From IMG/VR virus record IMGVR_UViG_3300024239_000011, positions 310,001-374,000 of that record: DNA of 64,000 nt; one strand, given 5' to 3'. A model generated the notes under the pieces. The model saw only the letters and a list, made by a program, of their open reading frames with translations. It had not been told where the DNA came from and did no database searches. Below, in pieces: positions 5,704 to 46,871 of the stretch (within the stretch, counting starts at the first letter, position 1; each line of letters starts with the position of its first letter). The position numbers and the translations under genes are program-made.

Positions 5704-5704
5704 T

Positions 5705-9511: not shown

Positions 9512-10890
9512 TCATGGACAACCCTTTCAGTCAGGTCTATTGGATCAATCTGCTCCTGACTAATAAATGTAACAAGCAGTGTTCGTACTGCTATGAGCAG
9601 CATAAAGCCGAGTTTGAACGGTCGTACATCAATGCACATCGTGTGGATGAAATCTGCGCGAAGATGGACACCATGAACTCGCTTCAGAAAACCCTCCATT
9701 TTTTTGGCGGCGAACCCATGCTGAAGTTCGACACCATCATGGAGTACATGCGGGCATCGTCCCATAAATACCCCACATTGTCTTACGTGATTATCACCAA
9801 CGGCACGCTACTGACTCCTCAGAAATTCGAGGATTTCGTTTCGCACGGCGGCTCATTCTACATTTCCTGCGACGGCTGGGGGATCGATAACACTGACATC
9901 ACAACCAAGGATTTCAGTGCTATCAAGGATGTGGTTGAGGCATGCTTCCCGGTGGTCGCAGCCTATGATAAACGCATTACGTTCGACGTAGTTGTGCATC
10001 CCCGTGAGGTCGCGTCGTTCGGGCGGTTTATGCAGTACCTCGCCGGAAGTCCGCATTTCGAGCAAATCAATATCCACATCAAGCCATTGCTATACAGCAT
10101 GACCGATGGGTTGGTGCGCTGGGATGACGCAGCGATTAATCAATTCTTACAGGAATGTATGAATGCCATTGTGAAATCAAAGGGCATCAATTTCGAGATA
10201 GAAGGGTTCTACGAGAAGTCATGGGGCACGTGCATGACCATGGCAAACAACCTGAATGTTGATGTTGAGGGTAATTTTTCAGGGTGTTATTTTCTACTGA
10301 ACCAACATAAAGCCACCTCGGCATTCGATGATGCCATTTTTGGCAACATTCTAACCGGCGAGATTGATACTGCCAAAATCGCCAACTTTAAACGCCTGGA
10401 ACAGGAACTCTACCAGTCCTCTAAATGCCAATCTTGCGTATTGAACCCAAAATGCTTCCAGTGCAGTGCTGGACTGTACACAACCCTTGGAAAGTGGTAC
10501 GACAACGACAAGCATTGCGAAATCGTTATCCCATTCATCCAACGGTTGAATTCCTTCCAAGCCATGAAAGAGGATGCATATATCATTGGCTGCCTGAAGG
10601 AGAAAATCCAGGAACATGGGTCTGAGTGGTTTGTGACTCGCCTTAAGTATTGGACGACAGTTCACATGCAAGCGACGTTGCTGGAAATTTGTAATGCACA
10701 TATCCCAGCACAAAACATTATGGCGGGAAATGCGCCACTTGATTTGGGTCAGTGGCTCAGTGATGCGGGGGCAAAGCAAGTAGCAGAGCTTCATCACATT
10801 TTCACGCCTGCATTGGCTGATCTTTCTGCTCAAGATCAGTTTACGCTTTGCGTTGCGCGTGTGATTGAGAAAGAACATCCCAAAACCTAA
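9505..10890 (+). CDS. Radical SAM / SPASM-domain protein with C-terminal extension
   Basis: CNKQCSYC, FGGEP, ITNG, SCDG, CQSCVLNPKCFQC. Confidence 0.92.
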   Translation: MVIMDNPFSQVYWINLLLTNKCNKQCSYCYEQHKAEFERSYINAHRVDEICAKMDTMNSLQKTLHFFGGEPMLKFDTIMEYMRASSHKYPTLSYVIITNGTLLTPQKFEDFVSHGGSFYISCDGWGIDNTDITTKDFSAIKDVVEACFPVVAAYDKRITFDVVVHPREVASFGRFMQYLAGSPHFEQINIHIKPLLYSMTDGLVRWDDAAINQFLQECMNAIVKSKGINFEIEGFYEKSWGTCMTMANNLNVDVEGNFSGCYFLLNQHKATSAFDDAIFGNILTGEIDTAKIANFKRLEQELYQSSKCQSCVLNPKCFQCSAGLYTTLGKWYDNDKHCEIVIPFIQRLNSFQAMKEDAYIIGCLKEKIQEHGSEWFVTRLKYWTTVHMQATLLEICNAHIPAQNIMAGNAPLDLGQWLSDAGAKQVAELHHIFTPALADLSAQDQFTLCVARVIEKEHPKT

Positions 10891-24882: not shown

Positions 24883-25197
24883 ATGATAACAGTTCGCATT
24901 CCCGGTGTAAGAACCGAGGAAGAATGGCGTACAGTTGCCATTTCCGATAATATTGAAATATTGTCGAATGTTTCGTGGGAGCAAGAAGAAGGGCGACGCC
25001 AATTTTTGCGTCTTTGGCAGTATCTTCTAAAAGGATGCCTCTTTGACTTTTATAGCATTACATCTTCAAGTGGTAAAGTAATTATTACTGCCATCAATCC
25101 TAATTGGTTTGATTTTGTAATTGAGACTGTACCGGATAAACATATGGTTGATTTTTTTGAAGATCAACGCGAAGCAGCAAATCGCTGTCTCGATTAA
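24883..25197 (+). CDS. Hypothetical protein (paralog of next gene)
   Basis: Shared ILSN..W..G..FV..PD..MVDFFE.QR. Confidence 0.6.
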   Translation: MITVRIPGVRTEEEWRTVAISDNIEILSNVSWEQEEGRRQFLRLWQYLLKGCLFDFYSITSSSGKVIITAINPNWFDFVIETVPDKHMVDFFEDQREAANRCLD

Positions 25198-25215
25198 TAT
25201 CAAACGGTTGGTGCT

Positions 25216-25497
25216 ATGGAAAATGATCTAAATTCCTATGAGGGGAAGGTAGACTTCCTTTCTAACGACCCCGATGAGCTTGCTTGTGCAAAGAAAGAAT
25301 GGGACATCTTCTGGCAATCTCTGATTGCTGGAACGGTACATGATAACTATAATTTTCATAATGATGCCCATGGACGTATTCTGATAATCCCGCGTAACGG
25401 CGACTTGATGACGTTCGTGGTCGATAAACGCCCAGACGAAAACATGGTTGATTTCTTTGAAGCGCAACGCCAAGAGGCGATCCGCGATCTCGACTAA
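25216..25497 (+). CDS. Hypothetical protein (paralog of previous gene)
   Basis: Same motifs as the previous gene. Confidence 0.6.
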   Translation: MENDLNSYEGKVDFLSNDPDELACAKKEWDIFWQSLIAGTVHDNYNFHNDAHGRILIIPRNGDLMTFVVDKRPDENMVDFFEAQRQEAIRDLD

Positions 25498-26967: not shown

Positions 26968-27732
26968 TCACCATTGAAAATGGTATGTTTTGAAAAACGC
27001 CCGCCAATGTGTGCATTCATTGGCGGCGAAAGTTTCGCGCATGAACAAGTAGTTTCCGGTGGATGTTGATAGGTAATGCGCCGGGGCGTCGAACTGGATG
27101 CCCATGGCGATATCCTCCATTCCTTTGTACAAGACTGAGACGATATTCGTGGGTACACGCTCGTCTTCAATGACATACATACTGTCGTTGATGATAAAGG
27201 AAACCGGTTTCCCACCGAACGAGACATCAGACACGGCACACATAGCACTCGTGGTTCTGCGTTCGAATAAGTCGAGTGCGGTAGCATGATTCATCATGAC
27301 CACATTACCACGACCTCGGCGCGTTTTTGCGGCGCACAAGTTTCCGCCTCGATTTATGATGATGAACGGTGAAACACCATCGCCCCCGCAAAAGGTAAAT
27401 TTTCGCGGTGAATAATAGGCTGTCAGGTCAACTGCCTCTGGGTCAGCCGTGATAAGGCTGATAAAGTATTTCTCTGCTTCAGCTAGATCGGTTACTTTGA
27501 CCCACGTGCCTTTTCCATCAAACGGGCGACACACATCCATGCGCAGTTTGATCGTTGGGCGAGGCGCATCCGGTGCATATGCTTTGGTAATGAACCAAGC
27601 TGTATACTGACGCTCGAATTCGGTTGTCGGATTTGTTGGTGGTTGTGGGTATTCCCGTGGCGTTTGATCTACCATGGTCACCAATGCCGATACCGTGTCT
27701 CCGGTATGGATACCAAGAAATGGATGCTGCAT
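26968..27732 (-). CDS. Truncated, divergent major-capsid (gp23-family)-like protein
   Basis: INRGGNLCAAKTRRGRGNVVMM and VSVLYKG..DA resemble gp23 ANxIAxxTRRGKGN and VGYKG..DAG. Confidence 0.6.
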   Translation of the reverse strand: MQHPFLGIHTGDTVSALVTMVDQTPREYPQPPTNPTTEFERQYTAWFITKAYAPDAPRPTIKLRMDVCRPFDGKGTWVKVTDLAEAEKYFISLITADPEAVDLTAYYSPRKFTFCGGDGVSPFIIINRGGNLCAAKTRRGRGNVVMMNHATALDLFERRTTSAMCAVSDVSFGGKPVSFIINDSMYVIEDERVPTNIVSVLYKGMEDIAMGIQFDAPAHYLSTSTGNYLFMRETFAANECTHWRAFFKTYHFQW

Positions 27733-28628
27733 TAGAACTTTCCCACTATTTCTTTGATCTGGTCGATGGCTGACGCAAAGCGGGTTTTCTGCTTATAATG
27801 CGATGAATGATGCGGTAGATCGTACTCTGGTCGATCCAAGCGAAACCGCAATGCGCGTGTCATGTTATGCCAATATGGACGCTCGTTTTTGTACAACAGG
27901 TTCTCCACGGGCAAGCAAAGCCACAGATCGTTGTCATGCCCCGTACAGACGTATCCGACCGCATCAATCTCGCCCGGTCCCTTATAGAATTGATGAACCA
28001 CGTCAGGCTTAACGTCGTCGGAGGTAACAAAATGACATCCACCTACCTGTCCTATAACCGGGTATCCTGCCATTTCATCAAGCCATGGATATCCCTTGTA
28101 GTCGGCAAGAGAACTCACATCCGGTTTGGTAAACAGAGACTTGACCATATGCGGTCGCGGATCACCGCCCAGAACCCGATGGTACGTCTCAGCCTGGGCG
28201 AACCATGTCCCGGCGAACCCGCGTCGGTTTTCTTGCCCCAGAGTGTTGGCCCGGCTAATCATCCAATGAATATGGGCTTCGGTGGGGTTACGCCGTTCAT
28301 ATCGGAACGCAAAATCAGCGAGACTATCCCAGTCCTGTAGCCGTTCTTCTGCGCTCCGCTGAAGAACGATTTGTTCGGCATGCTTAATCGAATTGACCTT
28401 GTGCCATTCTGCACGCGGATCGCCAATCTCAAGTGTTACGACTTTGATATTGAGGCGGGGATCAGGGCTAAGATACCCCTTGGCAATAGACCATGGATTG
28501 ATGGGATCGGTCGGTGGTTCTATTTCAGGATAAATCAATTCCATTATCAACGCATGTACTTTACCCACACTTCCTTTTGTGGTCTGTATACCCAAAAATG
28601 GGTGTAGAAATTCTGATCGGTTGGTCAT
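27732..28628 (-). CDS. Truncated, divergent major-capsid (gp23-family)-like protein
   Basis: GIQTTKGSVGKVHAL (cf. GVQPMTGPTGxxFAL), ANTLGQENRRG, FYKGPGEIDAVGYVC. Ends AIDQIKEIVGKF. Confidence 0.6.
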   Translation of the reverse strand: MTNRSEFLHPFLGIQTTKGSVGKVHALIMELIYPEIEPPTDPINPWSIAKGYLSPDPRLNIKVVTLEIGDPRAEWHKVNSIKHAEQIVLQRSAEERLQDWDSLADFAFRYERRNPTEAHIHWMISRANTLGQENRRGFAGTWFAQAETYHRVLGGDPRPHMVKSLFTKPDVSSLADYKGYPWLDEMAGYPVIGQVGGCHFVTSDDVKPDVVHQFYKGPGEIDAVGYVCTGHDNDLWLCLPVENLLYKNERPYWHNMTRALRFRLDRPEYDLPHHSSHYKQKTRFASAIDQIKEIVGKF

Positions 28629-29350
28629 GATATCATCCCCTGGAACATGCTAATGTCTACAGCACAGGCATAGTTGCGCCAATCATCGCGAATGTATAAC
28701 GCGAGATCATCGTTTTTCCGAAATATATTGGTAACCAAAAATGCGGGAGCAATATGTTGACCGGTGCCGCGCCATAATACAATGCAACGATCAGGTGGTA
28801 TTCGTTCATCCAGATACCCGAAGAAATAAGAGCGGAAAAAATCGCCGCCATGCCCGCGTTCTTCGTTCCAGCAAACGTTCTCGATTTTCTCTCGCCAAAC
28901 CGGATTCAACATACGTGTATTGGCGCCTTGCCGATTTAGCCGTATTAGATAATTCGCAGCACGATTCCACGTTTTTTCGATGTGGTCGCTGGTCGTGTCA
29001 GGTTCGAGAACGTTTGTAAGCACTTTCTCAATAAAAATGCTTTCCGCTTCATCAATACTTGAAACTCGTACCCATTCGCCTTTCTGATCCCACCATGCTT
29101 TATCCATGATTGGAGCATAGTCACATGTCGTTTGACACCGCTCAACGACCCCATTCTGTTGCTTGTCCCATTCCATGGCGCGTTCGTAGGGCACGATCTT
29201 CAATACATGTACCGAACCAGTCTGAATACCGAACAGGTGGTGTTGTTGCTTAATTGTCCCTGATCGGTCTGCCACAAGATTGGAGATAGTCAAACTGTCT
29301 CGGAGGACATCAATCCATGCACGGAACCCATTGTCGTTTTCGGAAGTCAT
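28625..29350 (-). CDS. Third gp23-like paralog
   Basis: FGIQTGSVHVL, RAANYLIRLNRQGAN, DERIPP..VLWRG align with the two downstream paralogs. Confidence 0.5.
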   Translation of the reverse strand: MTSENDNGFRAWIDVLRDSLTISNLVADRSGTIKQQHHLFGIQTGSVHVLKIVPYERAMEWDKQQNGVVERCQTTCDYAPIMDKAWWDQKGEWVRVSSIDEAESIFIEKVLTNVLEPDTTSDHIEKTWNRAANYLIRLNRQGANTRMLNPVWREKIENVCWNEERGHGGDFFRSYFFGYLDERIPPDRCIVLWRGTGQHIAPAFLVTNIFRKNDDLALYIRDDWRNYACAVDISMFQGMIS

Positions 29351-29405: not shown

Positions 29406-29422
29406 AACGATTAGGTGAAGCA

Positions 29423-30364
29423 ATGTCTAGTGGTATATATCGTATTCGCAATGTAATCAATAATAAATCTTACTACGGTAGTTCGAAAGATATCGAAAAA
29501 AGATGGTGTCAGCATCAAAGTAATCTCAATTGCGAACGACATATCAACCCACATCTACAACGTGCTTGGAAAAAATACGGAGCAGACAATTTCGTGTTCG
29601 AGATAGTTGAACTCGTGGAGGTCGATTTATTACTTGATGTTGAGCAGCAATACTTGGATGAAAACGTAGGTGGGTATAACATCGCACCGGCTGGTGGTGG
29701 CGATACAACCTCTAAACATCCAGATCGTGAGGCGATTATTGCTAAGCGCGTTGAAAGTGTTATCAATCGAAATGCTAAGTTATGCCCCGAGGAATATGCA
29801 AGGATTTATTGTGGGAAAATTGGTGAAAAGAACGGGATGTATGGAAAAACACACACGGAAGATGTAATAAGAAAAATCAAAGAAAAACTTCACAGTTGGT
29901 ATTCAGAAAATGATGGATACCGTAAAGGTAAGACGTTCGAAGAAGTGCATGGTGCCGAGATTGCTGAACACTTAAAACGAAAATTAAGTGAGTTTGCGTC
30001 TACCAGAACCGGTGCCAAAAATCCATTCTACGGTAAACATCATTCGGACGAAGCCAAACAAAAAATACGAGAAAAACACCTTGGCAAACCGCTATCTCAA
30101 TCAGCTAAACTGGCTATTACCGGAGAAAATTCTGCAAAATTTCAAGGATACTACCACACCCCATGGGGTGTGTTTCCTTCCACCCCACAAGCACAAAAGG
30201 CTCACCCATATCTATTATCCAACACCATTAACACTTGGTGCAAGAAATGTGATGTGGTAATTTCAAGAACTGGAAGATCGCGATACCTTCAGGAAATCGG
30301 GGAAAGTGTCGTGGGAAAAACCTACCGCGAAATTGGGTTTTGGTTTGAAGAAAAGGGCGCGTGA
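29423..30364 (+). mobile_element. Free-standing GIY-YIG homing endonuclease with NUMOD3 repeats
   Basis: SGIYRIRN..SYYGSS..RWCQH; repeats KNGMYGKTHT and KNPFYGKHHS. Convergent on thyA. Confidence 0.9.
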
Positions 30365-30385
30365 TGTACGCGCCCTTTCTTTTTA
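30351..30385. terminator. Bidirectional terminator
   Basis: aaagggcgcgt-gatgt-acgcgcccttt. Confidence 0.75.
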
Positions 30386-31216
30386 TACCGAAATCGGCAT
30401 GTCAATTTTGGGGTAACATTGGTAATTTTCGAGTTTGAAATCTTCGTATTTGAAATCGAAGATGTTCTTGACCTCGGGATTAATCCACATACGCGGCAAC
30501 GGATATGGTTCTCGGGTTAATTGAAGGTCGATCTGCTCGATGTGGTTGGTGTAGATATGTGCATTCATAATCGAGTGTACAAATTCACCCGGTTCAAGGT
30601 CGCATACTTGCGCCACCATCATGGTCAATAATGCATAGCTGGCTATATTAAAGGGAATTCCGAGTCCTACGTCCCCTGAACGTTGAAACAGTTGGCATGA
30701 CAATCTACCATTAGTTACAGCAAACCCAAAAGTTGTATGGCACGGGGGGAGCGCCTGAAGCCCGACAGCAGCGTTCTCATGTGGTTTCTTCTTGGGATCG
30801 GGTAGCAGAGCCGGATTCCACCCAGACACAATCAGACGGCGGCTGTCGGGGTTGCTCTTGATCTCTTTGATCAGGTCCGCGATCTGGTCGATGGTCTGTC
30901 CACAATTTCCGGGCCAAGACCGCCACATCTTGCCATAGACGGGACCAAGGTCACCCTCGGGTGTTGCCCATTCGTTCCATATATTAACGCCGTTGTCGGT
31001 CAGGTATTTGATGTTCGTGTCGCCCGCCAGGAACCACAGCAGTTCATGGATGATCCCCTTGGTGAAGACCTTTTTGGTTGTCACCAGCGGGAAACCCTCG
31101 GACAGATCAAAGCGCATCTGGTACCCGAACACCGAATAGGTACCGGTACCGGTGCGGTCCTGCTTGTACACGCCGTTTTCACGGATGTGTTTCAAAAGTT
31201 GAAGATACTGTTTCAT
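30383..31216 (-). CDS. thyA: Thymidylate synthase
   Basis: [37 protein letters not shown]. Confidence 0.97.
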
Positions 31217-31462: not shown

Positions 31463-31948
31463 TCACACTCGCACCATTTTGTTGAATACAAATGCCGGGT
31501 GGGTGTCGGTGGCTTGGTAATAGCCAGCATCGACGGTGCGCCATACGGCTTTGTCTATTTCAGGGAAGAACGCATCTGCATCGGGAACGTCTACTTCGAC
31601 TTGTGTGACGTAGAGTTTGTTCGCACGATGTATGGACTGTGCGTAAATCTGGGCACCACCAATGACCATAATCTCGTCGCTGGTAGCCGCCTCAAACGCA
31701 GAGTCAAGGGACCGGACGACGGTTGCACCGGGGATCGCCAATTCTGGATTGGTAGAAACCACGATGTTGTGCCTATTGGGAAGAACTCGCCCGATTGATT
31801 CGAACGTCTTCCGACCCATGATGATCGACTTGTTCTGGGTGACTTGCTTGAAGTACCGAAGATCGGTGGGGATATGCCAAAGAAGCTTGTTATCCTTGCC
31901 GATTGCCATGTTGCGAGACACCGCAACTATCAGAGATACCGTTCCCAC
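31463..31948 (-). CDS. folA: Dihydrofolate reductase
   Basis: AIGKDNKLLWHIPTDL..IMGRKTFESI..LPNR..VIGGAQIY..DAFFP. Confidence 0.96.
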   Translation of the reverse strand: MGTVSLIVAVSRNMAIGKDNKLLWHIPTDLRYFKQVTQNKSIIMGRKTFESIGRVLPNRHNIVVSTNPELAIPGATVVRSLDSAFEAATSDEIMVIGGAQIYAQSIHRANKLYVTQVEVDVPDADAFFPEIDKAVWRTVDAGYYQATDTHPAFVFNKMVRV

Positions 31949-32300: not shown

Positions 32301-33242
32301 ATGGCTAAACTAACGAGAGAAGAATTCATTGATCGTAGCATTGCAATTCATGGCGACAAATATGATTATTCACTGTGTGAATATCATAACTGTGATACCC
32401 CTGTCATTATTTTGTGCAGGGAGCATGGTACGTTTTCACAAACTCCATACCTTCATATGAAAGGGAGGGGCTGCCGCAAATGTGGTTATTTGAAAGTATC
32501 CAAATTTACATCAGAGAATAATAAGAAGAGGATAGTTCCGATTGAGCAAATTAGACTGCGACTTGCTGAAAAATACCCGTTATATAATTACGATAAAGCT
32601 GAACTATTCGGGAATACGCTTCAAGATATTTGGTGCCCAAAACACGGTTATTTTGAATTAAACTATCGATTACATGCTCATACCAATCGCCAATCAAAAT
32701 GCCCGAAATGCGCCCTCGAAATCAGAACTGGTAAACTCCGTCATACCCTTGATGATTTTATTCGCAAATCACAAGATGTGCATGGTAACAAGTATAATTA
32801 TTCAGCATCAACATATCTGGGGGATAGTTATAAAATTGAGATTGAATGCCCAGAACATGGTGTGTTTGCTCAAAAAGCAAATAACCATTTAAACGGGCAT
32901 GGGTGTCCAAAATGCGCCAACCGCTGGAAAATGCAAGATTTGTGGCTTGACCATCTTGGTCTTCCGCGATCATCCACACACCGACAAATACATCTTACAA
33001 TCGGTGATTATAAATTCATAGCAGATGGGTTTGATCCGGTTCAAAACACCGTCTATGAATTTTGGGGTGATTATTGGCACGGCAATCCAAGAAAATATAA
33101 TGCAGCAGCGACAAATCACTTCGGTAAAACCTTTGGAGATTTGTACACTGCTACATTAGAAAAACGCCGTGTCATCTTGACCAAATTTCAGTTGATTGAA
33201 ATTTGGGAGGATGAATACTTACTTCAACAACCCACGCTCTGA
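32301..33242 (+). mobile_element. Putative homing endonuclease (DUF723-like zinc repeats plus C-terminal nuclease)
   Basis: Repeats HGxKYxYS..CxxHGxF..GCxxC; C-terminal ADGF..YEFWGDYWHG. Opposite strand to its neighbours. Confidence 0.8.
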
Positions 33243-35054: not shown

Positions 35055-35630
35055 TCATATTATACGCTGAAACTCGCGACGAGCTTCTTCATATCGGGGT
35101 ATGATCAAGCTCGGTTCCCAACCCAGGTATTCGTTCCACGAGGGGTGAAACGAAATGATGGGCAGTTTCTTCCGCTTGTTAACCATTTCCCAATAGTCCG
35201 GACGGCGCGGCTTGGAACGTGGTAGGCGATCAAGAAAGTGTGCCTTATCGCGATTGCATTCCATACAACACGCCACGACGTTCGACCAATTGGTTTTGCC
35301 GCCGTGGTATCGGGGCTTAACGTGGTCGAGGGTCAGTTCATCCTTTGGAAATTTCTTCCGACAATACTGGCACGTAAACTCGTCACGCAGATACACATTG
35401 TACCTGCTGAACTTCACATGTAGTTCTGGCTTAATAAATTTGCGCAGCATCACGACCGCCGGTACGGTAATCGTCATCCGGGGTGAGTGAACCTGCCAAT
35501 CGTCATAGAACGCCAAAGCATCAGCCCGTTCTTCGAAAACGGAAATAATAGCTTCTTTCCATGTCGTTACCGACAGGGGCATGATCTTTAGAGGGCTGGC
35601 ATCAGCGTTAAGAACGAGGCAGGCACACAT
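35055..35630 (-). CDS. HNH endonuclease (McrA-like)
   Basis: LVLNAD..NVYLRDEFTCQYC..LTLDHVKPRYHGG..WSNVVACCMECNRDK. Confidence 0.9.
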   Translation of the reverse strand: MCACLVLNADASPLKIMPLSVTTWKEAIISVFEERADALAFYDDWQVHSPRMTITVPAVVMLRKFIKPELHVKFSRYNVYLRDEFTCQYCRKKFPKDELTLDHVKPRYHGGKTNWSNVVACCMECNRDKAHFLDRLPRSKPRRPDYWEMVNKRKKLPIISFHPSWNEYLGWEPSLIIPRYEEARREFQRII

Positions 35631-35849: not shown

Positions 35850-37175
35850 GTGTGTAATGTGAATACGCCCGAACTTCTAGCCAAAGCACTTGAATCGCTA
35901 CAGGATGGTGTGATCGTCACCGACGCTTCGCAAACCATAGTGTTCGTCAACGATTCGGTGTTGGCACAGACTGGGTACACCAGGGAGGAAGTGGTTGGAC
36001 AAACCCCCAAACTCTTCCAGTGTCATCAAACAACGGATACCTTTAAAAATTCAATACGCGCTACCCTTGCGCGTGGCGATTCCTTTATTGGGACGACGGT
36101 GAACCGTCGTAAAGACGGTACCACGTATCATGTTGAATTATATGTTGCTCCGATCCACGGGGAGGGTGGGATAACTCATTACGTTGGTACTCAACGCGAT
36201 ATTATCCGCCGAGGCGGAAGACATTTTGAATCATTTTTTGATGTATCCACCCACCTTCTAATTATCCTTGATGTGGATGGTACTCGTATCCGCATAAACA
36301 CCATTAATGCATTGGCAGAGAAATACCTTAATCCAGAATGGTGTACCTGCCGTGGTTTGGATATTTCGTTTCAATGCGCTGGGTTGGAGGAATTCGTCAT
36401 CCATGCCAAATTATGCACGGAGACGTGTGAGGTAACTCGCTTTGAGCAGGTTATCAATACCAATCAGGGTGAGCGCGTTGTTGAGTTCACGTTAGTCCCG
36501 GTAGTTGATGGTAATGGTGTATGTGTCGGTTTGAATTGCGTTGGTGAGGATATCACCAGCGAAAAAGAGGCTTTGGAACATATTCATTTCTTGGCCTACC
36601 ATGACAGCCTTACCGAACTTCCAAACCGCGTCCTCATGACGCAACGCATGAATGCTGAGATTGAACGTTCTCGGCGTTTTGGGCACCCGTTTGCGTTGCT
36701 GTTTCTTGATCTTGATAATTTCAAACAGGTCAACGACACGATGGGTCATGGGGTTGGTGATAAACTTCTCAAAAAGGTTGCGAAGCGTCTTTCTAGTGCT
36801 GTACGCAAGAATGATCTGGTGGCACGATTAGGTGGTGATGAATTCGCTGTCATCATGACAACGGACGGAGATGCTTTAGCTGATGCGGAAACGTTGGCGA
36901 CCCGAATCATTGCCGCATTATCACTACCGTTCGAGGTTGATGAACACCGGATCGATAATATCGGCGTGAGTGTTGGGGTTGCACTATTCCCCAATCATGC
37001 AACTTCGAGAGACGAGTTATTTCGCAACGCCGACATAGCGATGTATCACGCTAAACGCACACACGGAAATTGTCATACCGTTTTTGTAGATGTATTTGGT
37101 GGGTGTAAAAAAGATTGCGAACACTGTGATCTAAAAGTTCGATGCTTCGGAGATAGCTTCGTTCTCACCCCGTAA
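35850..37175 (+). CDS. PAS-PAS-GGDEF diguanylate cyclase
   Basis: PAS motifs (TGYTREEVVGQTP, NRRKDG); HDSLTELPNR, DLDNFKQVNDTMGH, RKND I-site, RLGGDEF. Confidence 0.95.
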   Translation: MCNVNTPELLAKALESLQDGVIVTDASQTIVFVNDSVLAQTGYTREEVVGQTPKLFQCHQTTDTFKNSIRATLARGDSFIGTTVNRRKDGTTYHVELYVAPIHGEGGITHYVGTQRDIIRRGGRHFESFFDVSTHLLIILDVDGTRIRINTINALAEKYLNPEWCTCRGLDISFQCAGLEEFVIHAKLCTETCEVTRFEQVINTNQGERVVEFTLVPVVDGNGVCVGLNCVGEDITSEKEALEHIHFLAYHDSLTELPNRVLMTQRMNAEIERSRRFGHPFALLFLDLDNFKQVNDTMGHGVGDKLLKKVAKRLSSAVRKNDLVARLGGDEFAVIMTTDGDALADAETLATRIIAALSLPFEVDEHRIDNIGVSVGVALFPNHATSRDELFRNADIAMYHAKRTHGNCHTVFVDVFGGCKKDCEHCDLKVRCFGDSFVLTP

Positions 37176-37221: not shown

Positions 37222-38559
37222 TTAGAACCGCATGATCTCATTCATTTTAAGAAGATCGTTACCGGTGAACTTCACCGTTACCATGGTCAGTGGTCCACCC
37301 TTCCCGCATCCAGTATCCGCGAACACAACCTTCCCGCCATTGGGGTTGGTGTAGATGTCCGGGTTTCCATCCACCGCACGGCTGTAATCGTGCCCGACAA
37401 TGGCGATCTGGTGTGCCGGAATGTTGTCCATCCAGTCATAAAGACGGGTAGGAAACTCTTTACCGGTCGCCGGATCGACAGTCTTGGTCCCATCCGTTTG
37501 ACCAAACATTGCCATGTTTTCCAACATGCCGTGTAACCGATGGGCATAACTGTTCAACATACCGGGATGAATGGCACCGTGGACGAAAGTCAGGTTACCG
37601 ATCCGCAGATGATGGCGTGCAAGACTGTACAACGCCATGAACTTACGTTCCCAGGATTGGCGCTGTTCCATCGGCAAAGCTTCGATCACGTTGAAAGTTT
37701 CACGGGTACCATGGGTGAACATGACCGTGATGTTGTCTTCAGTGCGCTCGTAACCTTCGACTTCGGCTTTCCCAAGCTGCTCGATGACCTTCTTGTATTT
37801 CCGCTCGTGATTACCCAGGATCATCATGCCGCGTCCGGTAGTCACCAAATCGTACATAAAGTCAACGGTACCCACCGGGTCGGGTCCATAGTCCACCACA
37901 TCACCCAACTGAACCACGAACAGGTTGTTCTCCTTGGCGTATTCCAAGGCATCCATCAACTGCTCAGACATATTGTGGACATCACCGATCACCGCGATAC
38001 CGGCAAACCCCTTCTCCTTGATCCACGTCAGTAAATCATAGTGATTGGGCTTTTGTACGACCACGAATTCATCGGTGCGCGCATCAACGACCAAGCGGTT
38101 CGGGGCATTATCGCCTCGAAGGATCGCCTGCTCATTTGCCTTGAATGTCTCGTGATGTGCTTCCACGAGCGTCTTGTCCTTGATAATCACACCATGACGC
38201 CACCCTTGTGTCTTCATTTTCTCGGGCAACGGGCGGTCATATACCAGATAAACCACAGGTACACCAGCATCAACGCCAATTTTAGCCGAGGATTCGCGGT
38301 CGCGCGTCTTCAGGTGCGTTGCATCAATAACGACACGTTCACCAACAGAAAGTTTCAACGCGGCACGGTGGCGCACTTCGTCAAAGACGATTTCGTTGAT
38401 ATCCTGGCGCATGTGGTCATTGACCAATTCGGCACGGATTGCGTCAGTCGAGATTACTTCATATGGACGAAAATGCTGCTCACAAAGGGTGGATTTCCCC
38501 GCACCTGATGGACCTACTAACAATACAAGTGCGTGAAGTGGAATAGATTTTACAGACAC
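37222..38559 (-). CDS. Polynucleotide kinase-phosphatase (P-loop kinase plus metallophosphoesterase)
   Basis: GPSGAGKS, STDAIR; GDVH, GDVVDYGP, GNHE, VHG, DTGCGKGG. The GTG start is a judgement call. Confidence 0.88.
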   Translation of the reverse strand: MSVKSIPLHALVLLVGPSGAGKSTLCEQHFRPYEVISTDAIRAELVNDHMRQDINEIVFDEVRHRAALKLSVGERVVIDATHLKTRDRESSAKIGVDAGVPVVYLVYDRPLPEKMKTQGWRHGVIIKDKTLVEAHHETFKANEQAILRGDNAPNRLVVDARTDEFVVVQKPNHYDLLTWIKEKGFAGIAVIGDVHNMSEQLMDALEYAKENNLFVVQLGDVVDYGPDPVGTVDFMYDLVTTGRGMMILGNHERKYKKVIEQLGKAEVEGYERTEDNITVMFTHGTRETFNVIEALPMEQRQSWERKFMALYSLARHHLRIGNLTFVHGAIHPGMLNSYAHRLHGMLENMAMFGQTDGTKTVDPATGKEFPTRLYDWMDNIPAHQIAIVGHDYSRAVDGNPDIYTNPNGGKVVFADTGCGKGGPLTMVTVKFTGNDLLKMNEIMRF

Positions 38560-38622
38560 GATACAAAACCTTTTTCTTTTCTTGGCCCTCCTTATACCGT
38601 GAACAATTTTCAAAGATCAATT

Positions 38623-38923: not shown

Positions 38924-39370
38924 ATGTCGAAATTCATTCCATCATTGATTGTTACGTTGTTAGTGTCGTCACCGTCCTACGGTCTGGACATTTCGGGGAA
39001 AATTACAGTTTTGGGGGAATGCCAAGCGACATATGCGCAATTGGTCATGATTTCCAATCTAACTGCCGGTTTCTTAACCATGTCTAATGCACCATCCGAA
39101 CAGGTACTCGGTTTTGCGCGTATTGGGCAGCACGCATTGGATGGGTTTGATCAAGCCGACGCAGAAGCCGAACGAATCATTGGAAATGCATCACCAAAGG
39201 ATCGAATTCGGCTTGATGTGATTAATAATCAAACTTTTCAAGAAACCACCAAGACGTGGGAAGAATTAAAAGTGTCGCTTACCACCGGGGCGTCCACCGC
39301 AACAATGTTCATGAAAAATTTGGTGGAAAAATCAAATCAGTGTGATGGTATATTGTCACAGATCGACTAA
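38924..39370 (+). CDS. Putative secreted protein
   Basis: Signal-peptide-like N-terminus; ATAAATA upstream. Confidence 0.55.
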   Translation: MSKFIPSLIVTLLVSSPSYGLDISGKITVLGECQATYAQLVMISNLTAGFLTMSNAPSEQVLGFARIGQHALDGFDQADAEAERIIGNASPKDRIRLDVINNQTFQETTKTWEELKVSLTTGASTATMFMKNLVEKSNQCDGILSQID

Positions 39371-40308
39371 GCGATATTCGCTCTGAGGCAATCATGAATA
39401 TGAATTACACCCATCACCTGATCGGCATCTACCACAATCAAGCTCGTAATGGTACGATCTGTCATCAGCTTCAGAGCATCCACCGCAAATGTATCAGGGG
39501 ACACCGTTTTAGGGTTCCGGGTCATGAAAACATCCACAGGCGTAGTCAACGGAACATGATCGATATTTCGACGGATATCCCCATCCGTGACTAGCCCTAA
39601 TAGCGTATTATCGTCATCCACCACAACCGCACACCCAAGTGCTTTTTTTCCAATGACGAGAATGGCGTCCTTCATCGTCGCGTGAATACACACTAAAGGC
39701 ATTGCTGGTCCTTGATGCATGATCTGCTTGACCAACAGCAATTCCCGCCCAAGCTTTCCACCGGGATGATAATGACCAAATTCTCGTTCGGTCAGTGTCT
39801 CGCTGTAAAGTGCCACTGCCAGCGCATCACCCAATGCTAACGACATCGTGGTTGAGGTCGTTGGTACCAATCCAAGTGGACATGCTTCGCGTTTTGGGAG
39901 GGTTAAAACGACCGTAGCTGCTGCGCCGATGGTGCTACTGGGGTTGGAAGTGATTACTACCACGGGTATCGCCCGGCGCCGACAGTAGTGCATTAGGTTG
40001 AACATTTCCCCGGTTTCGCCGGAATTCGAAATCCCAATGACCGCATCGCCCGGTTGGATCATCCCCATATCACCGTGGTTCGCCTCGGCGGGATGAACGA
40101 AGACCGCCGGTTTCCCTACTGATGATAATGTGGCCGCAATCTTACGGGCAATATGCCCGCTTTTGCCCATACCGGTAACGATTATTCGCCCACTCACTCC
40201 GGTAAGAACTTCACAGGCAGAAGTAAACCTTCCATCAAGGGTATTCGCCAGTTCTTGAATACCATCAGCTTCTTCTTTTAGTGTACGCTTTGCAATGTCG
40301 ATATACAT
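39367..40308 (-). CDS. kpsF: KpsF/GutQ arabinose-5-phosphate isomerase (SIS plus 2 CBS)
   Basis: VTGMGKSGHIARK, HPAEANHGDMG, SNSGET, PTTSTT, HPGGKLG, CBS pair. GAGGTG RBS before MYIDI. Confidence 0.93.
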   Translation of the reverse strand: MYIDIAKRTLKEEADGIQELANTLDGRFTSACEVLTGVSGRIIVTGMGKSGHIARKIAATLSSVGKPAVFVHPAEANHGDMGMIQPGDAVIGISNSGETGEMFNLMHYCRRRAIPVVVITSNPSSTIGAAATVVLTLPKREACPLGLVPTTSTTMSLALGDALAVALYSETLTEREFGHYHPGGKLGRELLLVKQIMHQGPAMPLVCIHATMKDAILVIGKKALGCAVVVDDDNTLLGLVTDGDIRRNIDHVPLTTPVDVFMTRNPKTVSPDTFAVDALKLMTDRTITSLIVVDADQVMGVIHIHDCLRANIA

Positions 40309-40348
40309 ATATTTCACCTCAATACATGAACATATACATACTGCTGAC

Positions 40349-40377
40349 TTGACATGCGGACAATTATTTTCTATACT
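40349..40377 (+). promoter_or_regulatory. Sigma70-type promoter
   Basis: TTGACA-17-TATACT. Confidence 0.7.
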
Positions 40378-40402
40378 GGTTAAAGTCAAGGAGAAAATCC
40401 CC

Positions 40403-40621
40403 ATGCGTTCAATTACCAAAGCCGACGTGGAACACTATTACGGCGGGATGGTTATGACGATGGCACGTTCGTTGGCAACCAAACCGTGGGATGATTTGAC
40501 TTTTAGATCGCGTCAGCGGCTTTTGAACAAAGCAGTAAAAGCACTTCATGCCATGCTCAATAACAAAGAGTGCGTGAGTGCATTGTTCACGTTTACCAGG
40601 GATCGTCTTACCAATAAGTAG
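40403..40621 (+). CDS. Hypothetical protein
   Basis: Has a promoter, AAGGAG RBS and downstream hairpin. Confidence 0.6.
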   Translation: MRSITKADVEHYYGGMVMTMARSLATKPWDDLTFRSRQRLLNKAVKALHAMLNNKECVSALFTFTRDRLTNK

Positions 40622-44263: not shown

Positions 44264-46681
44264 TTACGCCTCTGCCATCTTCTGGATGGTCGCATAGTCG
44301 GTCTTGCCGGTGCCCAGCAACGGGATGGCATCGACCACCTTGATCACCGCCGGAACCGACAGGGCACTGATGCCCTTACTCTTGGCATCTTCCGCCAAGG
44401 CAGCGCGGTTCGCATCCGGATTGGTCGTGAAGAGGACCAACTGTTCGCCCTTCTTCTCGTCCTTGATAGCGACCACGGCGTGCTGGTGTTGTACCCACAG
44501 CGCCGATACCTGGGTTTCGACGGCGGTCAACGACACCATTTCGCCCGCGATCTTGGCGAACCGCTTGGCACGCCCGCGAATGGTGATGAAACCCTGATCG
44601 TCCAGGCTCACCATGTCGCCGGTATCATACCAGCCATCCTCGGGCTGCTGGATGACGCCGGGGTTGTCCGCCTTGAGATAACCCAGCATGACGTTCGGAC
44701 CCCGGACGATCAGGCGGAAAGCATCCTCGACGCCGGGCACCGTGACCAACTTGTAGTCGATCAGGGGCATCAGGCGCCCAACAGTCCCGGAGCGATAGTG
44801 CATCGGGGTGTTGGTGGCGATGACAGGGGCGCATTCGGTCGCGCCGTAGCCCTCGTAGATCGCCCGCTGGAACTTCTCCATGTAGAGCGCGCGAGTGCTG
44901 TCCTTGACCTTCTCAGCGCCCGCAAAGATGTAGCGGATGCTGCGGAAATCATAGGGGTGCGCTTGCTTGGCGTAGCCGTTCAGGAACGTGTCCGTACCAA
45001 ACATGATGGTCACGTTGCGGTCATAGACCAGTTCCGGGATGACTTTGTAGTTCAAAGGGTTCGGGAACAGGAACACCTTGATGCCATTCAGGAACGGCAA
45101 TAGCGTGCCCGCCGTCAGACCAAAGCTGTGGAACATGGGCAGAGCGTTCAGTACGATGTCCTGCGGCGAGAAATCGACCGAGGCAGCCAACTGGTACATG
45201 TTGGATAGCAGGTTCTTGTGCGACAGTACGACGCCCTTCGGGACGCCCTCCGACCCACTGGTGAAAATCACAACCGCCGGGGTATGCGCGGTCAGGTCTT
45301 CGCTGTCATGCAGACTATACGGGGGACGTGTTGCATCATAGTGAATCGCACGGGCATCGGTATAGTCCAAGAATTTACCACGCAACTTGGCGATCAGCCC
45401 GATATTAGCACCGATATCTTCGAGGTAGACCACGTTGACGCCATTCAGTGAATCGTTCTCACCGTTTTCCAACCCCTTGATCACGTCCTGAAGCTTCGCC
45501 TGTTCAACGAAGAACCGGCTGGTGATCACGGTCTTGATCTCCGCTGCTCGGATTGACGCCTGAATATTGCGCAACCCGGTACTGAAATTCAACATGGCGG
45601 GCACACGACCGAACGCCTGAAGGGCAAAGAACGTTACGGCAGTCTTGATGCTGTTGGGCAGCAAAACACCGATAAATTCACCCTGGTTGGTAAACTGGCT
45701 CAATTGACGACCTAGAACCAGTGTCCCCACAATGAAATTCTTGTAGGTTATCGCGGTGATTTCCTTGGTCGTAGGGTCGATGTTTTCCGCAATCACGGTC
45801 TTTTCGCCGTAGGATGCCGATGCATCAAGCAAACCTTCATACAACGTTTGATCAGCACGATCAGTGGCAGCCATCATGGCAACCATTTCATCGTACAGCC
45901 AATTACCAATGGCAATGCGGCGGGTTTTGCCACGCATCGGTACATGACCCGTACCATCACACCGCTCGCATAGGCGACGGTTGTCACCCGGATACAAACC
46001 AGATGCAAAAATGATATCACCGTCGCCATCGCATACAGGGCATTGCTGCTGCCCGATATTGACCTTACGGGGCGGAAGCATGGTCATTTCGAACGGATGC
46101 CCATAATGTACTGGGTTCCGCCCGCGCAGCCGCGACAATGGCGTGAAATGGACACCTTCCAGACGGATGGGGACAATGTTGGCATCCGCTTTATCCGCGA
46201 TCATACCGGGACCGTCGTAAACCTTCATCAGACCATTGGTGACAGTCAATCGTCCCTCTGGAAAAATCACAACCGGCTTGCCGTCCTTAACCAGATTGAC
46301 GAGCGCCTTGATCGCCATTGGGTTGCGTGTGTCGAGGGTCACACAGTTGAAAAACGGCATAACCAATTGCATCCACCACCACTTCGACGCACCAAGATTA
46401 ACGGCGAACGTCGGGTTCCCCGGAATGTAGGTGGCGAGGATGGCAGCATCCACGAAGCTGACATGATTGGCGATATAGATGACGCGATCCCCGGCGAGTT
46501 TGGCGTTTTCCAGCCCCTTCACCGTGATGTTGTTGTGCAGAGCAAAGACAATACGCAAACCCAGACGAACAAAAGGACCGCCGATTTTCTTCAGCACGGC
46601 AAACCACATGTCGATCATACACCGCAACATGTGGTCGATCATCCAGTTATAGACAGTGTTTTTAATCTCACGATCAGTCAT
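44264..46681 (-). CDS. aas: Bifunctional acyltransferase / acyl-ACP synthetase (Aas-like)
   Basis: PlsC motifs ANHVSFVD and IFPEGR; AMP-binding FTSGSEGVPKG, YEGYGATE, WYDTGD, GKTDY. Confidence 0.92.
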   Translation of the reverse strand: MTDREIKNTVYNWMIDHMLRCMIDMWFAVLKKIGGPFVRLGLRIVFALHNNITVKGLENAKLAGDRVIYIANHVSFVDAAILATYIPGNPTFAVNLGASKWWWMQLVMPFFNCVTLDTRNPMAIKALVNLVKDGKPVVIFPEGRLTVTNGLMKVYDGPGMIADKADANIVPIRLEGVHFTPLSRLRGRNPVHYGHPFEMTMLPPRKVNIGQQQCPVCDGDGDIIFASGLYPGDNRRLCERCDGTGHVPMRGKTRRIAIGNWLYDEMVAMMAATDRADQTLYEGLLDASASYGEKTVIAENIDPTTKEITAITYKNFIVGTLVLGRQLSQFTNQGEFIGVLLPNSIKTAVTFFALQAFGRVPAMLNFSTGLRNIQASIRAAEIKTVITSRFFVEQAKLQDVIKGLENGENDSLNGVNVVYLEDIGANIGLIAKLRGKFLDYTDARAIHYDATRPPYSLHDSEDLTAHTPAVVIFTSGSEGVPKGVVLSHKNLLSNMYQLAASVDFSPQDIVLNALPMFHSFGLTAGTLLPFLNGIKVFLFPNPLNYKVIPELVYDRNVTIMFGTDTFLNGYAKQAHPYDFRSIRYIFAGAEKVKDSTRALYMEKFQRAIYEGYGATECAPVIATNTPMHYRSGTVGRLMPLIDYKLVTVPGVEDAFRLIVRGPNVMLGYLKADNPGVIQQPEDGWYDTGDMVSLDDQGFITIRGRAKRFAKIAGEMVSLTAVETQVSALWVQHQHAVVAIKDEKKGEQLVLFTTNPDANRAALAEDAKSKGISALSVPAVIKVVDAIPLLGTGKTDYATIQKMAEA

Positions 46682-46871
46682 GAAGGCAATCCTGCGGCAG
46701 GTTAAGAGGTGAGTTTTAACGAACACCATCCCAACTAGCAAGACCTTAAATATGGCTTTTGCACTTGTTCCTATGGTAAATAAGGTTCGCCGCTGATGCT
46801 CAAACCACACCATAGGCAGGGCATGGTGGCACCCTCACAACCTCCAAACTACACCAAGCAGGAGAGAGTTT

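What the first reader, a model, noticed from the sequence alone, without database searches (positions are those of the whole stretch)
26968..29350. Tandem trio of shrunken, divergent major-capsid (gp23-like) paralogs
Seen: three coupled minus-strand ORFs of about 240-300 aa share H(P/L)F(L)GI(Q/H)T..V.(A/V)L, W.(K/R)V....AE..., R..N....(T/N)R(R/Q)G, D..(V/I).P..V...(Y/W)(K/R)G. From knowledge, these match T4-type gp23 landmarks in the right order (GVQPMTGPTG..FAL; ANxIAxxTRRGKGN; VGYKG..DAG). The proteins are roughly half capsid length and sit next to thyA rather than in a head operon. The middle one ends in a degenerate tag. Inference: capsid mimics (decoys for capsid-sensing defences; the GVQP segment overlaps the Gol region sensed by Lit in T4), or minor vertex-like proteins.
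Basis: partly seen in the sequence, partly recalled or inferred. Interest (0 to 1): 0.75.

Follow-up and report, generated by a model that had tools for sequence, protein, structure and literature searches.

The report
Three shrunken capsid-protein copies in a giant phage
A 543-kb phage carries, far from its head genes, three back-to-back genes that are stripped-down but well-preserved copies of its own shell protein; they probably do not build the shell and may act as soluble capsid look-alikes, which has not been described before but is untested.

Summary
Window 26968-29350 (minus strand) has three start/stop-overlapping genes of 254, 298 and 241 aa. They are paralogs of each other and of the genome's real gp23-type major capsid protein (MCP, 399 aa), which lies 131 kb away.

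- **Homology:** BLASTP to the MCP gives 3e-12 and 3e-6. A family profile hits MCPs at 1e-12 to 1e-17 and T4 gp23 at 1e-5.
- **Fold:** AF2 models (pLDDT 77-78) align to T4 gp23 residues ~106-521 at Z 13.2-13.5, a full HK97 core. The whole N-arm/delta region is missing (about 80 residues), the spine helix is less than half as long, and the MCP stretch after it is largely gone.
- **Selection:** an 8-kb metagenome contig carries the same trio after thyA. dN/dS is about 0.05-0.08 for two copies. The third copy has diverged to 26% identity.
- **Distribution:** only a handful of members turned up in billions of proteins. The family is absent from 10 complete or near-complete relatives whose MCPs are 68-86% identical.

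A vertex or minor-capsid role is therefore unlikely, and the "degenerate tag" is a conserved C-terminal helix. My best guess, at low confidence, is soluble capsid mimics that titrate an MCP-recognising factor such as host capsid sensors. Assembly modulation is the main rival. Function is untested.

The parts
26968..27732 (-). mini-MCP 1 (P0001, 254 aa): HK97-fold paralog of the phage's gp23-type MCP, lacking the N-arm; the copy most like the MCP
   Evidence: BLASTP to own MCP gives 3e-12, 38% identity over 112 aa. Pfam Gp23 scores 17 bits, below the cut-off; its ortholog P0006 scores 27.1 bits, above it. AF2 model pLDDT 76.9. VIA Z 13.2 to T4 gp23 7vrt, model 1-254 against gp23 106-520. dN/dS 0.08 against the L004 ortholog.
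27732..28628 (-). mini-MCP 2 (P0002, 298 aa): same fold plus a conserved C-terminal helix (residues ~276-297); it belongs to the more widespread subfamily
   Evidence: BLASTP to MCP gives 3e-6, spanning MCP 82-340. AF2 pLDDT 77.8, Z 13.5 to gp23 107-521. The ortholog P0008 is 76% identical with dN/dS 0.05. Relatives are P0010, P0011 and P0012/P0135.
28625..29350 (-). mini-MCP 3 (P0003, 241 aa from the ATG at 29350; a TTG at 29407 is possible): the fastest-evolving copy, with a unique ~35-aa N-terminal extension
   Evidence: BLASTP to P0001 gives 1e-7 over ~200 aa. There is no significant direct hit to the MCP. The positional ortholog P0007 is only 26% identical, yet itself passes the Pfam Gp23 cut-off at 26.7 bits. 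An RBS-like AGGA precedes the ATG.
29423..30364 (+). GIY-YIG/NUMOD3 homing endonuclease gene inserted, in the opposite orientation, between thyA and the trio; preceded by a T4-late-like ATAAATA at -38
   Evidence: Pfam GIY-YIG 3.4e-9 and NUMOD3 1.5e-12. Absent at this position in L004. Motif position.
30352..30378 (.). GC-rich hairpin with T-runs between the GIY-YIG and thyA gene ends (terminator-like)
   Evidence: Consensus scan only.
30383..31216 (-). thyA (thymidylate synthase), the ancestral upstream neighbour of the trio
   Evidence: In L004 the order is DHFR - 80-aa ORF - ThyA - trio, with Pfam PF00303 on the ortholog. The two ThyA proteins are 84% identical.
31463..31948 (-). dfr (dihydrofolate reductase), in the same-strand gene run
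   Evidence: The L004 ortholog carries PF00186. The two proteins are 90% identical.
24883..25497 (+). two small ORFs (104 and 93 aa) ending in ..MVDFFE.QR.EA...LD. Small ORFs at G000:C1:254.6-255.9 kb end in related tails (FFE/FFD-type), and three consecutive ORFs there, two of them with such a tail, carry MCP N-terminal or spine-helix peptides; a possible link, not shown

Best explanation
The three genes encode 'mini-MCPs', pared-down copies of the phage's own gp23-type major capsid protein. They keep the HK97 core: the P-domain strands, a slightly shortened E-loop, and the A-domain with its NR.AN..RRG.GN and YKG.GE.DA motifs. They have lost the ~80-residue delta/N-arm region, more than half of the spine helix and most of the MCP stretch after it. 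In HK97-type shells the N-arm is generally needed for scaffold-guided, inter-capsomer lattice assembly. This much is shown. Inferred: they are soluble, non-lattice accessory proteins made from the thyA/dfr-side transcription unit rather than the head operon. I infer that they work by mimicry, presenting the most conserved MCP surfaces to a factor that normally recognises the MCP and titrating or blocking it. The most plausible such factor is a host capsid-sensing defence, either a fold-wrapping sensor of the Avs7/8/10 type or a motif sensor of the Lit/CapRel type. Tandem duplication and the fast divergence of copy 3 would then reflect diversification against different sensors.
For: - **Homology and fold:**
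- **Missing N-arm and shortened spine helix:** alignments, and the secondary structure.
- **Functional constraint:** pN is 0.17-0.19 against saturated pS of 0.73-0.74, giving dN/dS of about 0.05-0.08 for copies 1 and 2. This is similar to thyA.
- **Accessory, sporadic distribution:** the family profile finds only the full-length MCP in 5 IMG/VR relatives (four rated 100% complete, one 68%), one 91%-complete record, 17 fragments and 4 isolates: Phosso, Atu_ph07, PA5oct and Vibrio 2.275.O. Only a handful of members exist among 1.8-5.8 billion proteins.
- **Tandem arrays recur:** they are seen in G000, L004/L005 and L009.
- **Fast evolution of copy 3:** only 26% identity between positional orthologs.
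- **Non-structural neighbourhood:** radical-SAM genes, thyA/dfr, GGDEF, RNA ligase and homing endonucleases.
- **No late-type promoter:** no T4-late-like ATAAATA precedes the trio on its strand, whereas the motif peaks at -30 to -41 before 77 other ORFs.
- **Plausible targets exist:** Avs7/8/10 wrap the HK97 MCP and contact the conserved A-domain, while Lit and CapRel read short MCP motifs (bioRxiv 10.64898/2026.01.04.697583). Gol is the most conserved gp23 region (PMC3014915).
Against: - No experiment or computation here addresses binding to any sensor, and the host and its defences are unknown.
- A protein that keeps the sensed epitope might trigger a sensor rather than block it.
- Only the distal half of the Gol-equivalent segment is kept.
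- Expression timing is not known. L004 has a hairpin plus T-run between thyA and the first mini-MCP, and in G000 a homing-endonuclease gene separates them.
- I found no published precedent for a capsid-protein decoy.
- The AF2 models used alignments that include full-length MCPs, so part of the fold signal is inherited from them.
Confidence: 0.35

Rival explanations
1. They are capsid-assembly modulators or minor shell components. On this reading the mini-MCPs co-assemble with the real MCP, for example at special positions or by capping or altering capsomers, and tune head size, shape or stability. This would be analogous to the satellite protein Ccm, an MCP homolog that redirects helper capsid assembly, or to T4 gp24.
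For: They keep the A-domain capsomer-forming motifs and an E-loop. The nearest ESM-Atlas cluster by shape is 'putative capsid vertex protein' at TM 0.62, and gp24 (1yue) scores Z 10.5-10.8. There is a precedent: SaPIbov5 Ccm is a capsid-protein homolog that changes capsid shape (PMC8569155).
Against: There is no N-arm or delta domain, so no obvious scaffold or protease handling. The family is absent from 10 complete or near-complete relatives whose MCPs are 68-86% identical, so it is not needed to build this kind of head. It is encoded 131 kb from the head genes among accessory genes. The complex prediction for the trio gave no verdict.
Confidence: 0.25
2. They are inter-phage weapons. On this reading the mini-MCPs are dominant-negative subunits that poison capsomer or lattice formation of co-infecting related phages.
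For: The distribution is sporadic and fast-evolving, with tandem amplification. Capsomer-interface motifs are retained while lattice-forming parts are absent.
Against: The MCP of this clade is 80-93% identical across many phages, so a poison would be expected to hit the producer's own MCP. No immunity determinant is evident.
Confidence: 0.1
3. The fold has been exapted for a job unrelated to capsid recognition, for example an organiser or partner of the neighbouring folate/thymidylate enzymes, or a small compartment.
For: In G000 and L004 the trio follows thyA/dfr. In L007 the single copy is next to a phosphoribosyltransferase. A second locus with MCP-derived micro-ORFs lies beside a FolD-domain ORF.
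Against: The evidence is purely positional, and jumbo-phage accessory regions mix many functions. No cargo-type signal or binding evidence was found. Phosso has thyA-dfr without any mini-MCP.
Confidence: 0.12
4. They are decaying leftovers of MCP gene duplications with no function.
For: They are truncated, highly divergent and rare. Copy 3 is only 26% identical between two phages. A short duplicated MCP C-terminal fragment lies just downstream of the MCP gene at G000:C1:205886-205933.
Against: The reading frames are intact in both phages, gene order and overlapping start/stop junctions are conserved, and dN/dS is 0.05-0.08 for copies 1 and 2 despite saturated synonymous change. Family-specific motifs such as the N-terminal HPF(L/I)GIQ and W.KV.SI.EAE are conserved across four or more distant phages. 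No variants were seen across samples.
Confidence: 0.05

Closest known systems
T4-type major capsid protein gp23 (Pfam PF07068; PDB 7vrt, 6uzc, 5vf3) and this genome's own MCP at G000:C1:205997-207193
   Same: The proteins are homologous over MCP residues ~82-340. They share the HK97 core and the motif blocks G[IV]Q..[VI]H.L, NR.AN..RRG.GN and YKG.GE.DA.
   Different: They lack the first ~80 residues (delta domain and N-arm), more than half of the spine helix and most of the stretch after it. They are 241-298 aa against 399 aa and only 20-38% identical. They are encoded 131 kb away among accessory genes and are absent from close relatives.
T4 gp24 head vertex protein (PDB 1yue), the classic gp23 paralog
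   Same: Both arose by duplication of the MCP gene within the phage. The structural match is Z 10.5-10.8.
   Different: gp24 is full-length with an N-terminal region, sits in the head module and occupies the pentons. The mini-MCPs have no N-arm, come as a tandem trio and are dispensable across the clade. This genome shows no other full-length gp23-like gene.
SaPIbov5 Ccm, a capsid-protein homolog that redirects helper phage capsid assembly (PMC8569155)
   Same: It is an extra HK97-fold MCP homolog whose role is not to be the main shell protein.
   Different: Ccm is encoded by a satellite, is a near full-length capsid protein and co-assembles into shells. The mini-MCPs are encoded by the phage itself and lack the N-arm.
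Gol region of T4 gp23, the trigger of the Lit protease (review PMC3014915)
   Same: The mini-MCPs start inside the equivalent of this most-conserved gp23 segment and keep its distal G-[IV]-Q..[VI]-H-x-L part.
   Different: The proximal half (RRxxP..IA..) is missing from the mini-MCPs. Copies of that half occur instead in separate micro-ORFs at G000:C1:254.6-255.0 kb. No Lit-type interaction was tested.

Membership tests
Pfam PF07068 Gp23 / T4-type MCP superfamily (by descent) | Significant sequence match to the family model or to bona fide members | tested here: met
   P0001 scores 17.1 bits, below the 24.4 cut-off, and P0002 and P0003 give no Pfam hit. The orthologs P0006 and P0007 score 27.1 and 26.7 bits, above the cut-off. 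BLASTP to the own MCP gives 3e-12 and 3e-6. The family profile hits MCPs at 1e-12 to 1e-17 in 28 records. The match covers only profile positions ~201-319 of 376.
Pfam PF07068 Gp23 / T4-type MCP superfamily (by descent) | HK97 fold: P-domain, E-loop, spine helix and A-domain | tested here: met
   AF2 models have pLDDT 77-78 and pTM 0.74-0.77. All top Foldseek hits are HK97 capsid proteins. VIA Z is 13.2 and 13.5 to T4 gp23, with 213-216 residues aligned. Caveat: the alignments used for modelling included MCPs.
Functional major capsid / shell-forming protein | N-terminal delta domain and N-arm for scaffold interaction, protease processing and inter-capsomer contacts | tested here: not met
   The alignments start at MCP residue ~80-82, equivalent to T4 gp23 ~106. 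Copy 3 has an unrelated 35-aa extension.
Functional major capsid / shell-forming protein | Encoded in the head module and conserved in all relatives | tested here: not met
   The trio lies 131 kb from the MCP/scaffold genes. It is absent from 10 complete or near-complete relatives.
Functional major capsid / shell-forming protein | Present in virions | not testable with these tools
   The phage is uncultured and known only from subsurface, wastewater and sludge metagenomes. No proteome exists.
gp24-type vertex protein | Full-length gp23 paralog forming pentons, syntenic with head genes | tested here: not met
   The proteins are truncated and non-syntenic. The structural similarity to 1yue is no better than that to gp23.
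Gol-type Lit trigger | The complete ~29-residue Gol-equivalent segment of gp23 | tested here: inconclusive
   Only the distal part is present at the N-terminus. The review gives the length of the region and its conservation. Its exact T4 coordinates are from my memory (about 93-122).
Anti-defence decoy/sponge | Binds and neutralises a host immune sensor | not testable with these tools
   The host and its sensors are unknown. No anti-defence profile library was available, and PHROGs gave no informative hit.

The most novel reading that the evidence does not exclude
A giant phage has turned its own capsid protein into a set of soluble decoys. The N-arm-less mini-MCPs, and perhaps also the micro-ORFs that carry the MCP N-terminal/Gol-like and spine-helix peptides at 254.6-255.3 kb, would be made apart from the head operon. 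They would soak up or jam host sensors that detect the HK97 capsid fold or its conserved motifs. This would be the first case of molecular self-mimicry of a capsid protein as counter-defence.
Probability: 0.25. Interest if true: 0.85.

Novelty: new variant of a known kind. Interest (0 to 1): 0.6.

Why it matters
Capsid proteins are now known to be major triggers of bacterial immunity (Lit, CapRel, Avs7/8/10), yet no phage counter-measure based on mimicking the capsid protein has been described. This locus offers a concrete and easily cloned candidate set. It comprises three conserved HK97-core proteins that have lost the parts needed for lattice building but keep the most conserved MCP surfaces. 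If they turn out instead to be assembly modulators, they would be a phage-encoded counterpart of satellite capsid-redirecting MCP homologs, in a clade with some of the largest known phage heads. Either way, this shows that the gp23 fold can be trimmed to about 240 residues and kept under selection outside the virion module.

Tried and rejected
- **Complex prediction:** the complex-prediction job on the three proteins together scored 0.00, with no verdict and no controls run. This is no evidence for or against binding.
- **hhalign of separate parts:** the N- and C-terminal thirds of the MAFFT family profile, tested alone against the MCP profile, were not significant. The N-terminal homology was rescued only by pairwise BLAST with the L004 P2 ortholog at 2e-5 and by the structural alignments.
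- **ESM Atlas stored models:** these were poor, with pLDDT 0.32 and 0.42. Only P0001 pointed to Gp23 clusters.
- **Searches that found nothing:**
  - PHROGs gave no informative hit.
  - Megablast of the region against phages gave none.
  - tblastn of P0002 and P0003 against 50,697 phage records gave none.
  - The search for related loci with P0001 in IMG/VR gave none.
  - The profile search of the 5.8-billion-protein set returned only three proteins.
- **Sequencing runs:** identical short pieces occur in wastewater, sludge and subsurface runs. The one 'RNA' run is probably DNA, so there is no expression information.
- **Promoter and terminator scans:** these were at shuffle level and not informative.
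- **Linking MCP divergence to the L004 phage:** the attempt failed because the 93%-identical MCP comes from a different sample.
- **Rejected ideas:** pseudogenes for copies 1 and 2, because of dN/dS; an encapsulin-like shell, because there is no N-arm and no cargo signal; and a product of the GIY-YIG insertion, because the trio exists without that gene in L004.
Full report
**What is there.** The window is G000:C1:310001-374000 of a 543,035-bp IMG/VR virus record that CheckV rates complete. On the minus strand lie three ORFs: 26968-27732 (P0001, 254 aa), 27732-28628 (P0002, 298 aa) and 28625-29350 (P0003, 241 aa). P0003 starts at an ATG with an AGGA 6 nt upstream; a TTG at 29407 would add 19 residues. 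BLASTP gives 2e-7 for P1-P2, 1e-7 for P1-P3 over ~200 residues, and only 0.64 for P2-P3.

**They derive from the capsid protein.** The same genome has one full-length gp23-type MCP (P0004, 399 aa, Pfam Gp23 270 bits) at C1:205997-207193. It lies directly after a coiled-coil scaffold-like gene and 131 kb from the trio.
- BLASTP of P0004 gives 3e-12 to P0001 (38% over MCP 235-339) and 3e-6 to P0002 (one alignment spanning MCP 82-340). It gives nothing significant to P0003.
- hhalign of the trio, or of a nine-member family profile, against the MCP gives 97-98% probability, with E-values of 2e-11 to 1.5e-14.
- The family profile finds the MCP gene at 1e-12 to 1e-17 in every related genome searched. 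It finds T4 gp23 in the PDB (6uzc, residues 354-450) at 1.3e-5.
- Pfam itself is below its cut-off for P0001 (17.1 against 24.4 bits) and silent for P0002 and P0003. It is above the cut-off for two orthologs from another phage, at 27.1 and 26.7 bits.
- On profile statistics alone, only the central ~100 residues (A-domain core) are significant.
- The N-terminal block is nevertheless homologous. The P2 ortholog P0008 aligns its first 61 residues to MCP 74-139 at 2e-5. That alignment includes G[IV]Q, [VI]H[AT]LR and a near-identical LSPF[DE]IA..YSG.

**Fold.**
- AF2 with alignments of 18 sequences (family plus MCPs) gave pLDDT 76.9 and pTM 0.74 for P0001, and 77.8 and 0.77 for P0002.
- Every top Foldseek hit in the PDB is an HK97-fold capsid protein. 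The best is T4 gp23 at E 3e-6 and probability 1.0.
- VIA-align gives Z 13.2 for P0001 (216 residues aligned, model 1-254 against gp23 106-520).
- It gives Z 13.5 for P0002 (model 7-265 against gp23 107-521).
- gp24 (1yue) scores Z 10.5-10.8, and HK97 gp5 and encapsulins score Z ~8-9.
- The ESM-Atlas shape search finds Gp23-family clusters.

The secondary-structure order is:
1. an N-terminal hairpin;
2. a helix;
3. a 20-residue hairpin equivalent to the E-loop, about 4 residues shorter than in the MCP;
4. a 12-15-residue spine helix, against about 40 residues in the MCP;
5. the A-domain helices and sheet;
6. the returning P-domain strands.

P0002 adds a C-terminal helix at residues 276-297.

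What is missing is the entire delta/N-arm region (MCP 1-80), more than half of the spine helix and most of the MCP stretch after it. One caveat applies: MCP rows in the alignments contribute to the fold signal.

**The 'degenerate tag'.** The last ~35 residues of P0002 are conserved in P0008 and P0133. Other members end in DY(L/M).AIR.I-type helices, and the MCP ends in ADYLGLVGI. This is a conserved C-terminal element, not a degenerate tag.

**Conservation and distribution.**
- An 8-kb ENA contig (L004), and a Logan copy of it (L005), carry DHFR, an 80-aa ORF, ThyA and then the same three genes in the same order. There is no homing endonuclease between thyA and the trio there.
- Against those orthologs, amino-acid identity is 66% for P1, 76% for P2, 84% for ThyA and 90% for DHFR. 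pN is 0.17-0.19 and pS is saturated at 0.73-0.74, so dN/dS is about 0.08 and 0.05, like thyA at 0.05.
- The third copy is only 26% identical to its positional ortholog.
- A tree groups P1 with P3 types, and P2 with single genes from three other contigs. The duplications therefore predate the G000/L004 split.
- The family is tiny. phmmer of P0002 against 1.84 billion representatives found four real relatives. Two searches of the 5.8-billion set found two and three proteins.
- One relative sits alone among small genes next to a phosphoribosyltransferase on a 31-kb jumbo-phage-like contig (L007).
- Another relative (L009) is preceded by a second, partial family member. Its true N-terminus again reads HPFIGIQ.
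- The real MCP, in contrast, is 80-93% identical across thousands of metagenomic proteins. It is 81% identical to Sinorhizobium phage Phosso and 69% to Atu_ph07 and PA5oct. That places the phage in the gp23-type 'group 2.2' jumbo phages (PMC7824862).
- None of the relatives searched has a mini-MCP; in each, only the full-length MCP matches. They were 5 IMG/VR records of 290-608 kb (four rated 100% complete, one 68%), one 91%-complete record, 17 fragments and 4 isolates.
- Phosso has thyA-dfr without them.

**Context and expression.**
- The surrounding 64 kb is accessory rather than structural. It holds five tandem radical-SAM genes, DUF3050, thyA/dfr and GIY-YIG and HNH endonucleases.
- It also holds a PAS-GGDEF cyclase, a kinase-phosphatase, a SIS-CBS isomerase, an acyltransferase/AMP-ligase fusion and an RNA ligase.
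- A T4-late-like ATAAATA lies within 70 nt upstream of 77 of 728 crude ORFs genome-wide, mostly at -30 to -41. In the 72-bp gap upstream of the trio it points to the GIY-YIG gene, not to the trio.
- In L004 a GC hairpin plus a T-run lies between thyA and the first mini-MCP, leaving no room for a promoter. The trio is probably read through from the thyA unit.
- Timing therefore remains inferred.
- Public runs show identical short pieces in subsurface, wastewater and sludge samples, but they give no usable RNA evidence.

**Interpretation.**
- *Shown:* these are MCP-derived proteins with an HK97 core and no N-arm. Two of them are under strong purifying selection, they form a recurrent tandem array, and they are accessory and rare.
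- *Inferred:* without an N-arm, and with less than half of the spine helix, they should not build a lattice. Their absence from relatives with near-identical MCPs means this head type does not need them. That disfavours a vertex or minor-capsid role.
- *Best guess:* retention of the most conserved MCP surfaces, sporadic occurrence, amplification and one rapidly diverging copy fit proteins engaged in conflict. Capsid-sensing defences that wrap the HK97 fold (Avs7/8/10) or read short MCP motifs (Lit, CapRel) are documented. My best guess (0.35) is soluble capsid mimics that titrate an MCP-recognising factor.
- *Rivals:* the main rival (0.25) is modulation of capsid assembly, for which the satellite protein Ccm is a precedent. 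Poisoning of competitors, a role tied to the neighbouring nucleotide enzymes, and functionless decay are less likely.
- *Untested binding:* a three-chain complex prediction gave no verdict.

**Related oddity.** Elsewhere in the same genome (C1:254.6-255.3 kb), three consecutive overlapping small ORFs carry short MCP-derived peptides.
- One carries MCP 189-207 (spine helix).
- One carries MCP 1-19 fused to 62-80.
- One carries MCP 70-98, the Gol-equivalent region.

These are largely the parts the mini-MCPs lack. Two of them share a C-terminal FFE/FFD-type tail with two small ORFs 1.5 kb from the trio (window 24883-25497). The locus also abuts a FolD-domain ORF. Individually the matches are marginal (E 0.02-0.16), but they cluster within 470 bp. 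Whether this belongs to the same story is open.

Noticed in passing
G000:C1:254590-255260 (outside the window; locus L122:787-1459, minus strand): Three consecutive overlapping small ORFs (82, 73 and 69 aa) contain short MCP-derived peptides: spine helix 189-207; N-terminus 1-19 fused to N-arm 62-80; and N-arm plus the Gol-equivalent 70-98. Each match is marginal (E 0.02-0.16), but all three lie within 470 bp. Relatives show only their MCP gene, plus one extra place in G003.
   Followed up: partly
window 24883-25197 and 25216-25497 (+); L122:787-2065: A small-protein family ends in ..(V)DFFE.QR.EA...D(L)D. It occurs only at these two loci, both of which hold MCP-derived genes and both of which lie next to folate/thymidylate genes: thyA/dfr here, and a FolD C-terminal-domain ORF (PF02882, 1.6e-42) there.
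   Followed up: partly
window 4483-10890 (+): Five tandem radical-SAM/4Fe-4S genes in a row, unusual cargo for a phage.
   Followed up: no
window 35850-37175 (+): A phage-encoded PAS-GGDEF diguanylate cyclase (GGDEF 7e-49).
   Followed up: no
window 29423-30364 (+), 32301-33242 (+), 35055-35630 (-): Mobile-element-type genes flank the thyA/dfr block. A GIY-YIG/NUMOD3 endonuclease is inserted between thyA and the trio and is absent in L004. There is also a zinc-ribbon/DUF723 protein and an HNH endonuclease.
   Followed up: partly
L004:688-3020: The related phage contig carries an IS1595-family DDE transposase and an IS605 OrfB/TnpB (Cas12f-like) gene just upstream of its DHFR-ThyA-trio block.
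   Followed up: no
G000:C1:205886-205933: A short duplicated fragment of the MCP C-terminus (..GNAADYLG.., with stops) lies just downstream of the MCP gene.
   Followed up: no
table, row P0004: The exact MCP sequence of this 543-kb record is also recorded on a contig of 869,618 bp, and an 86%-identical MCP on one of 853,705 bp. Either larger relatives exist or these are concatenated assemblies.
   Followed up: no
BFVD hits to model m233dc50e6b49: The best structural matches among viral proteins are two unnamed short proteins with neighbouring UniProt accessions, A0A345MM67 (328 aa, E 1e-9) and A0A345MM72 (250 aa). This may be another phage with short MCP paralogs.
   Followed up: no
window 44264-46813 (-), 39367-40419 (-), 37222-38613 (-), 55529-56743 (-): Further auxiliary genes: an acyltransferase plus AMP-binding fusion (849 aa), a SIS-CBS sugar-phosphate isomerase, an AAA_33 kinase plus metallophosphatase, and a T4-type RNA ligase.
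   Followed up: no
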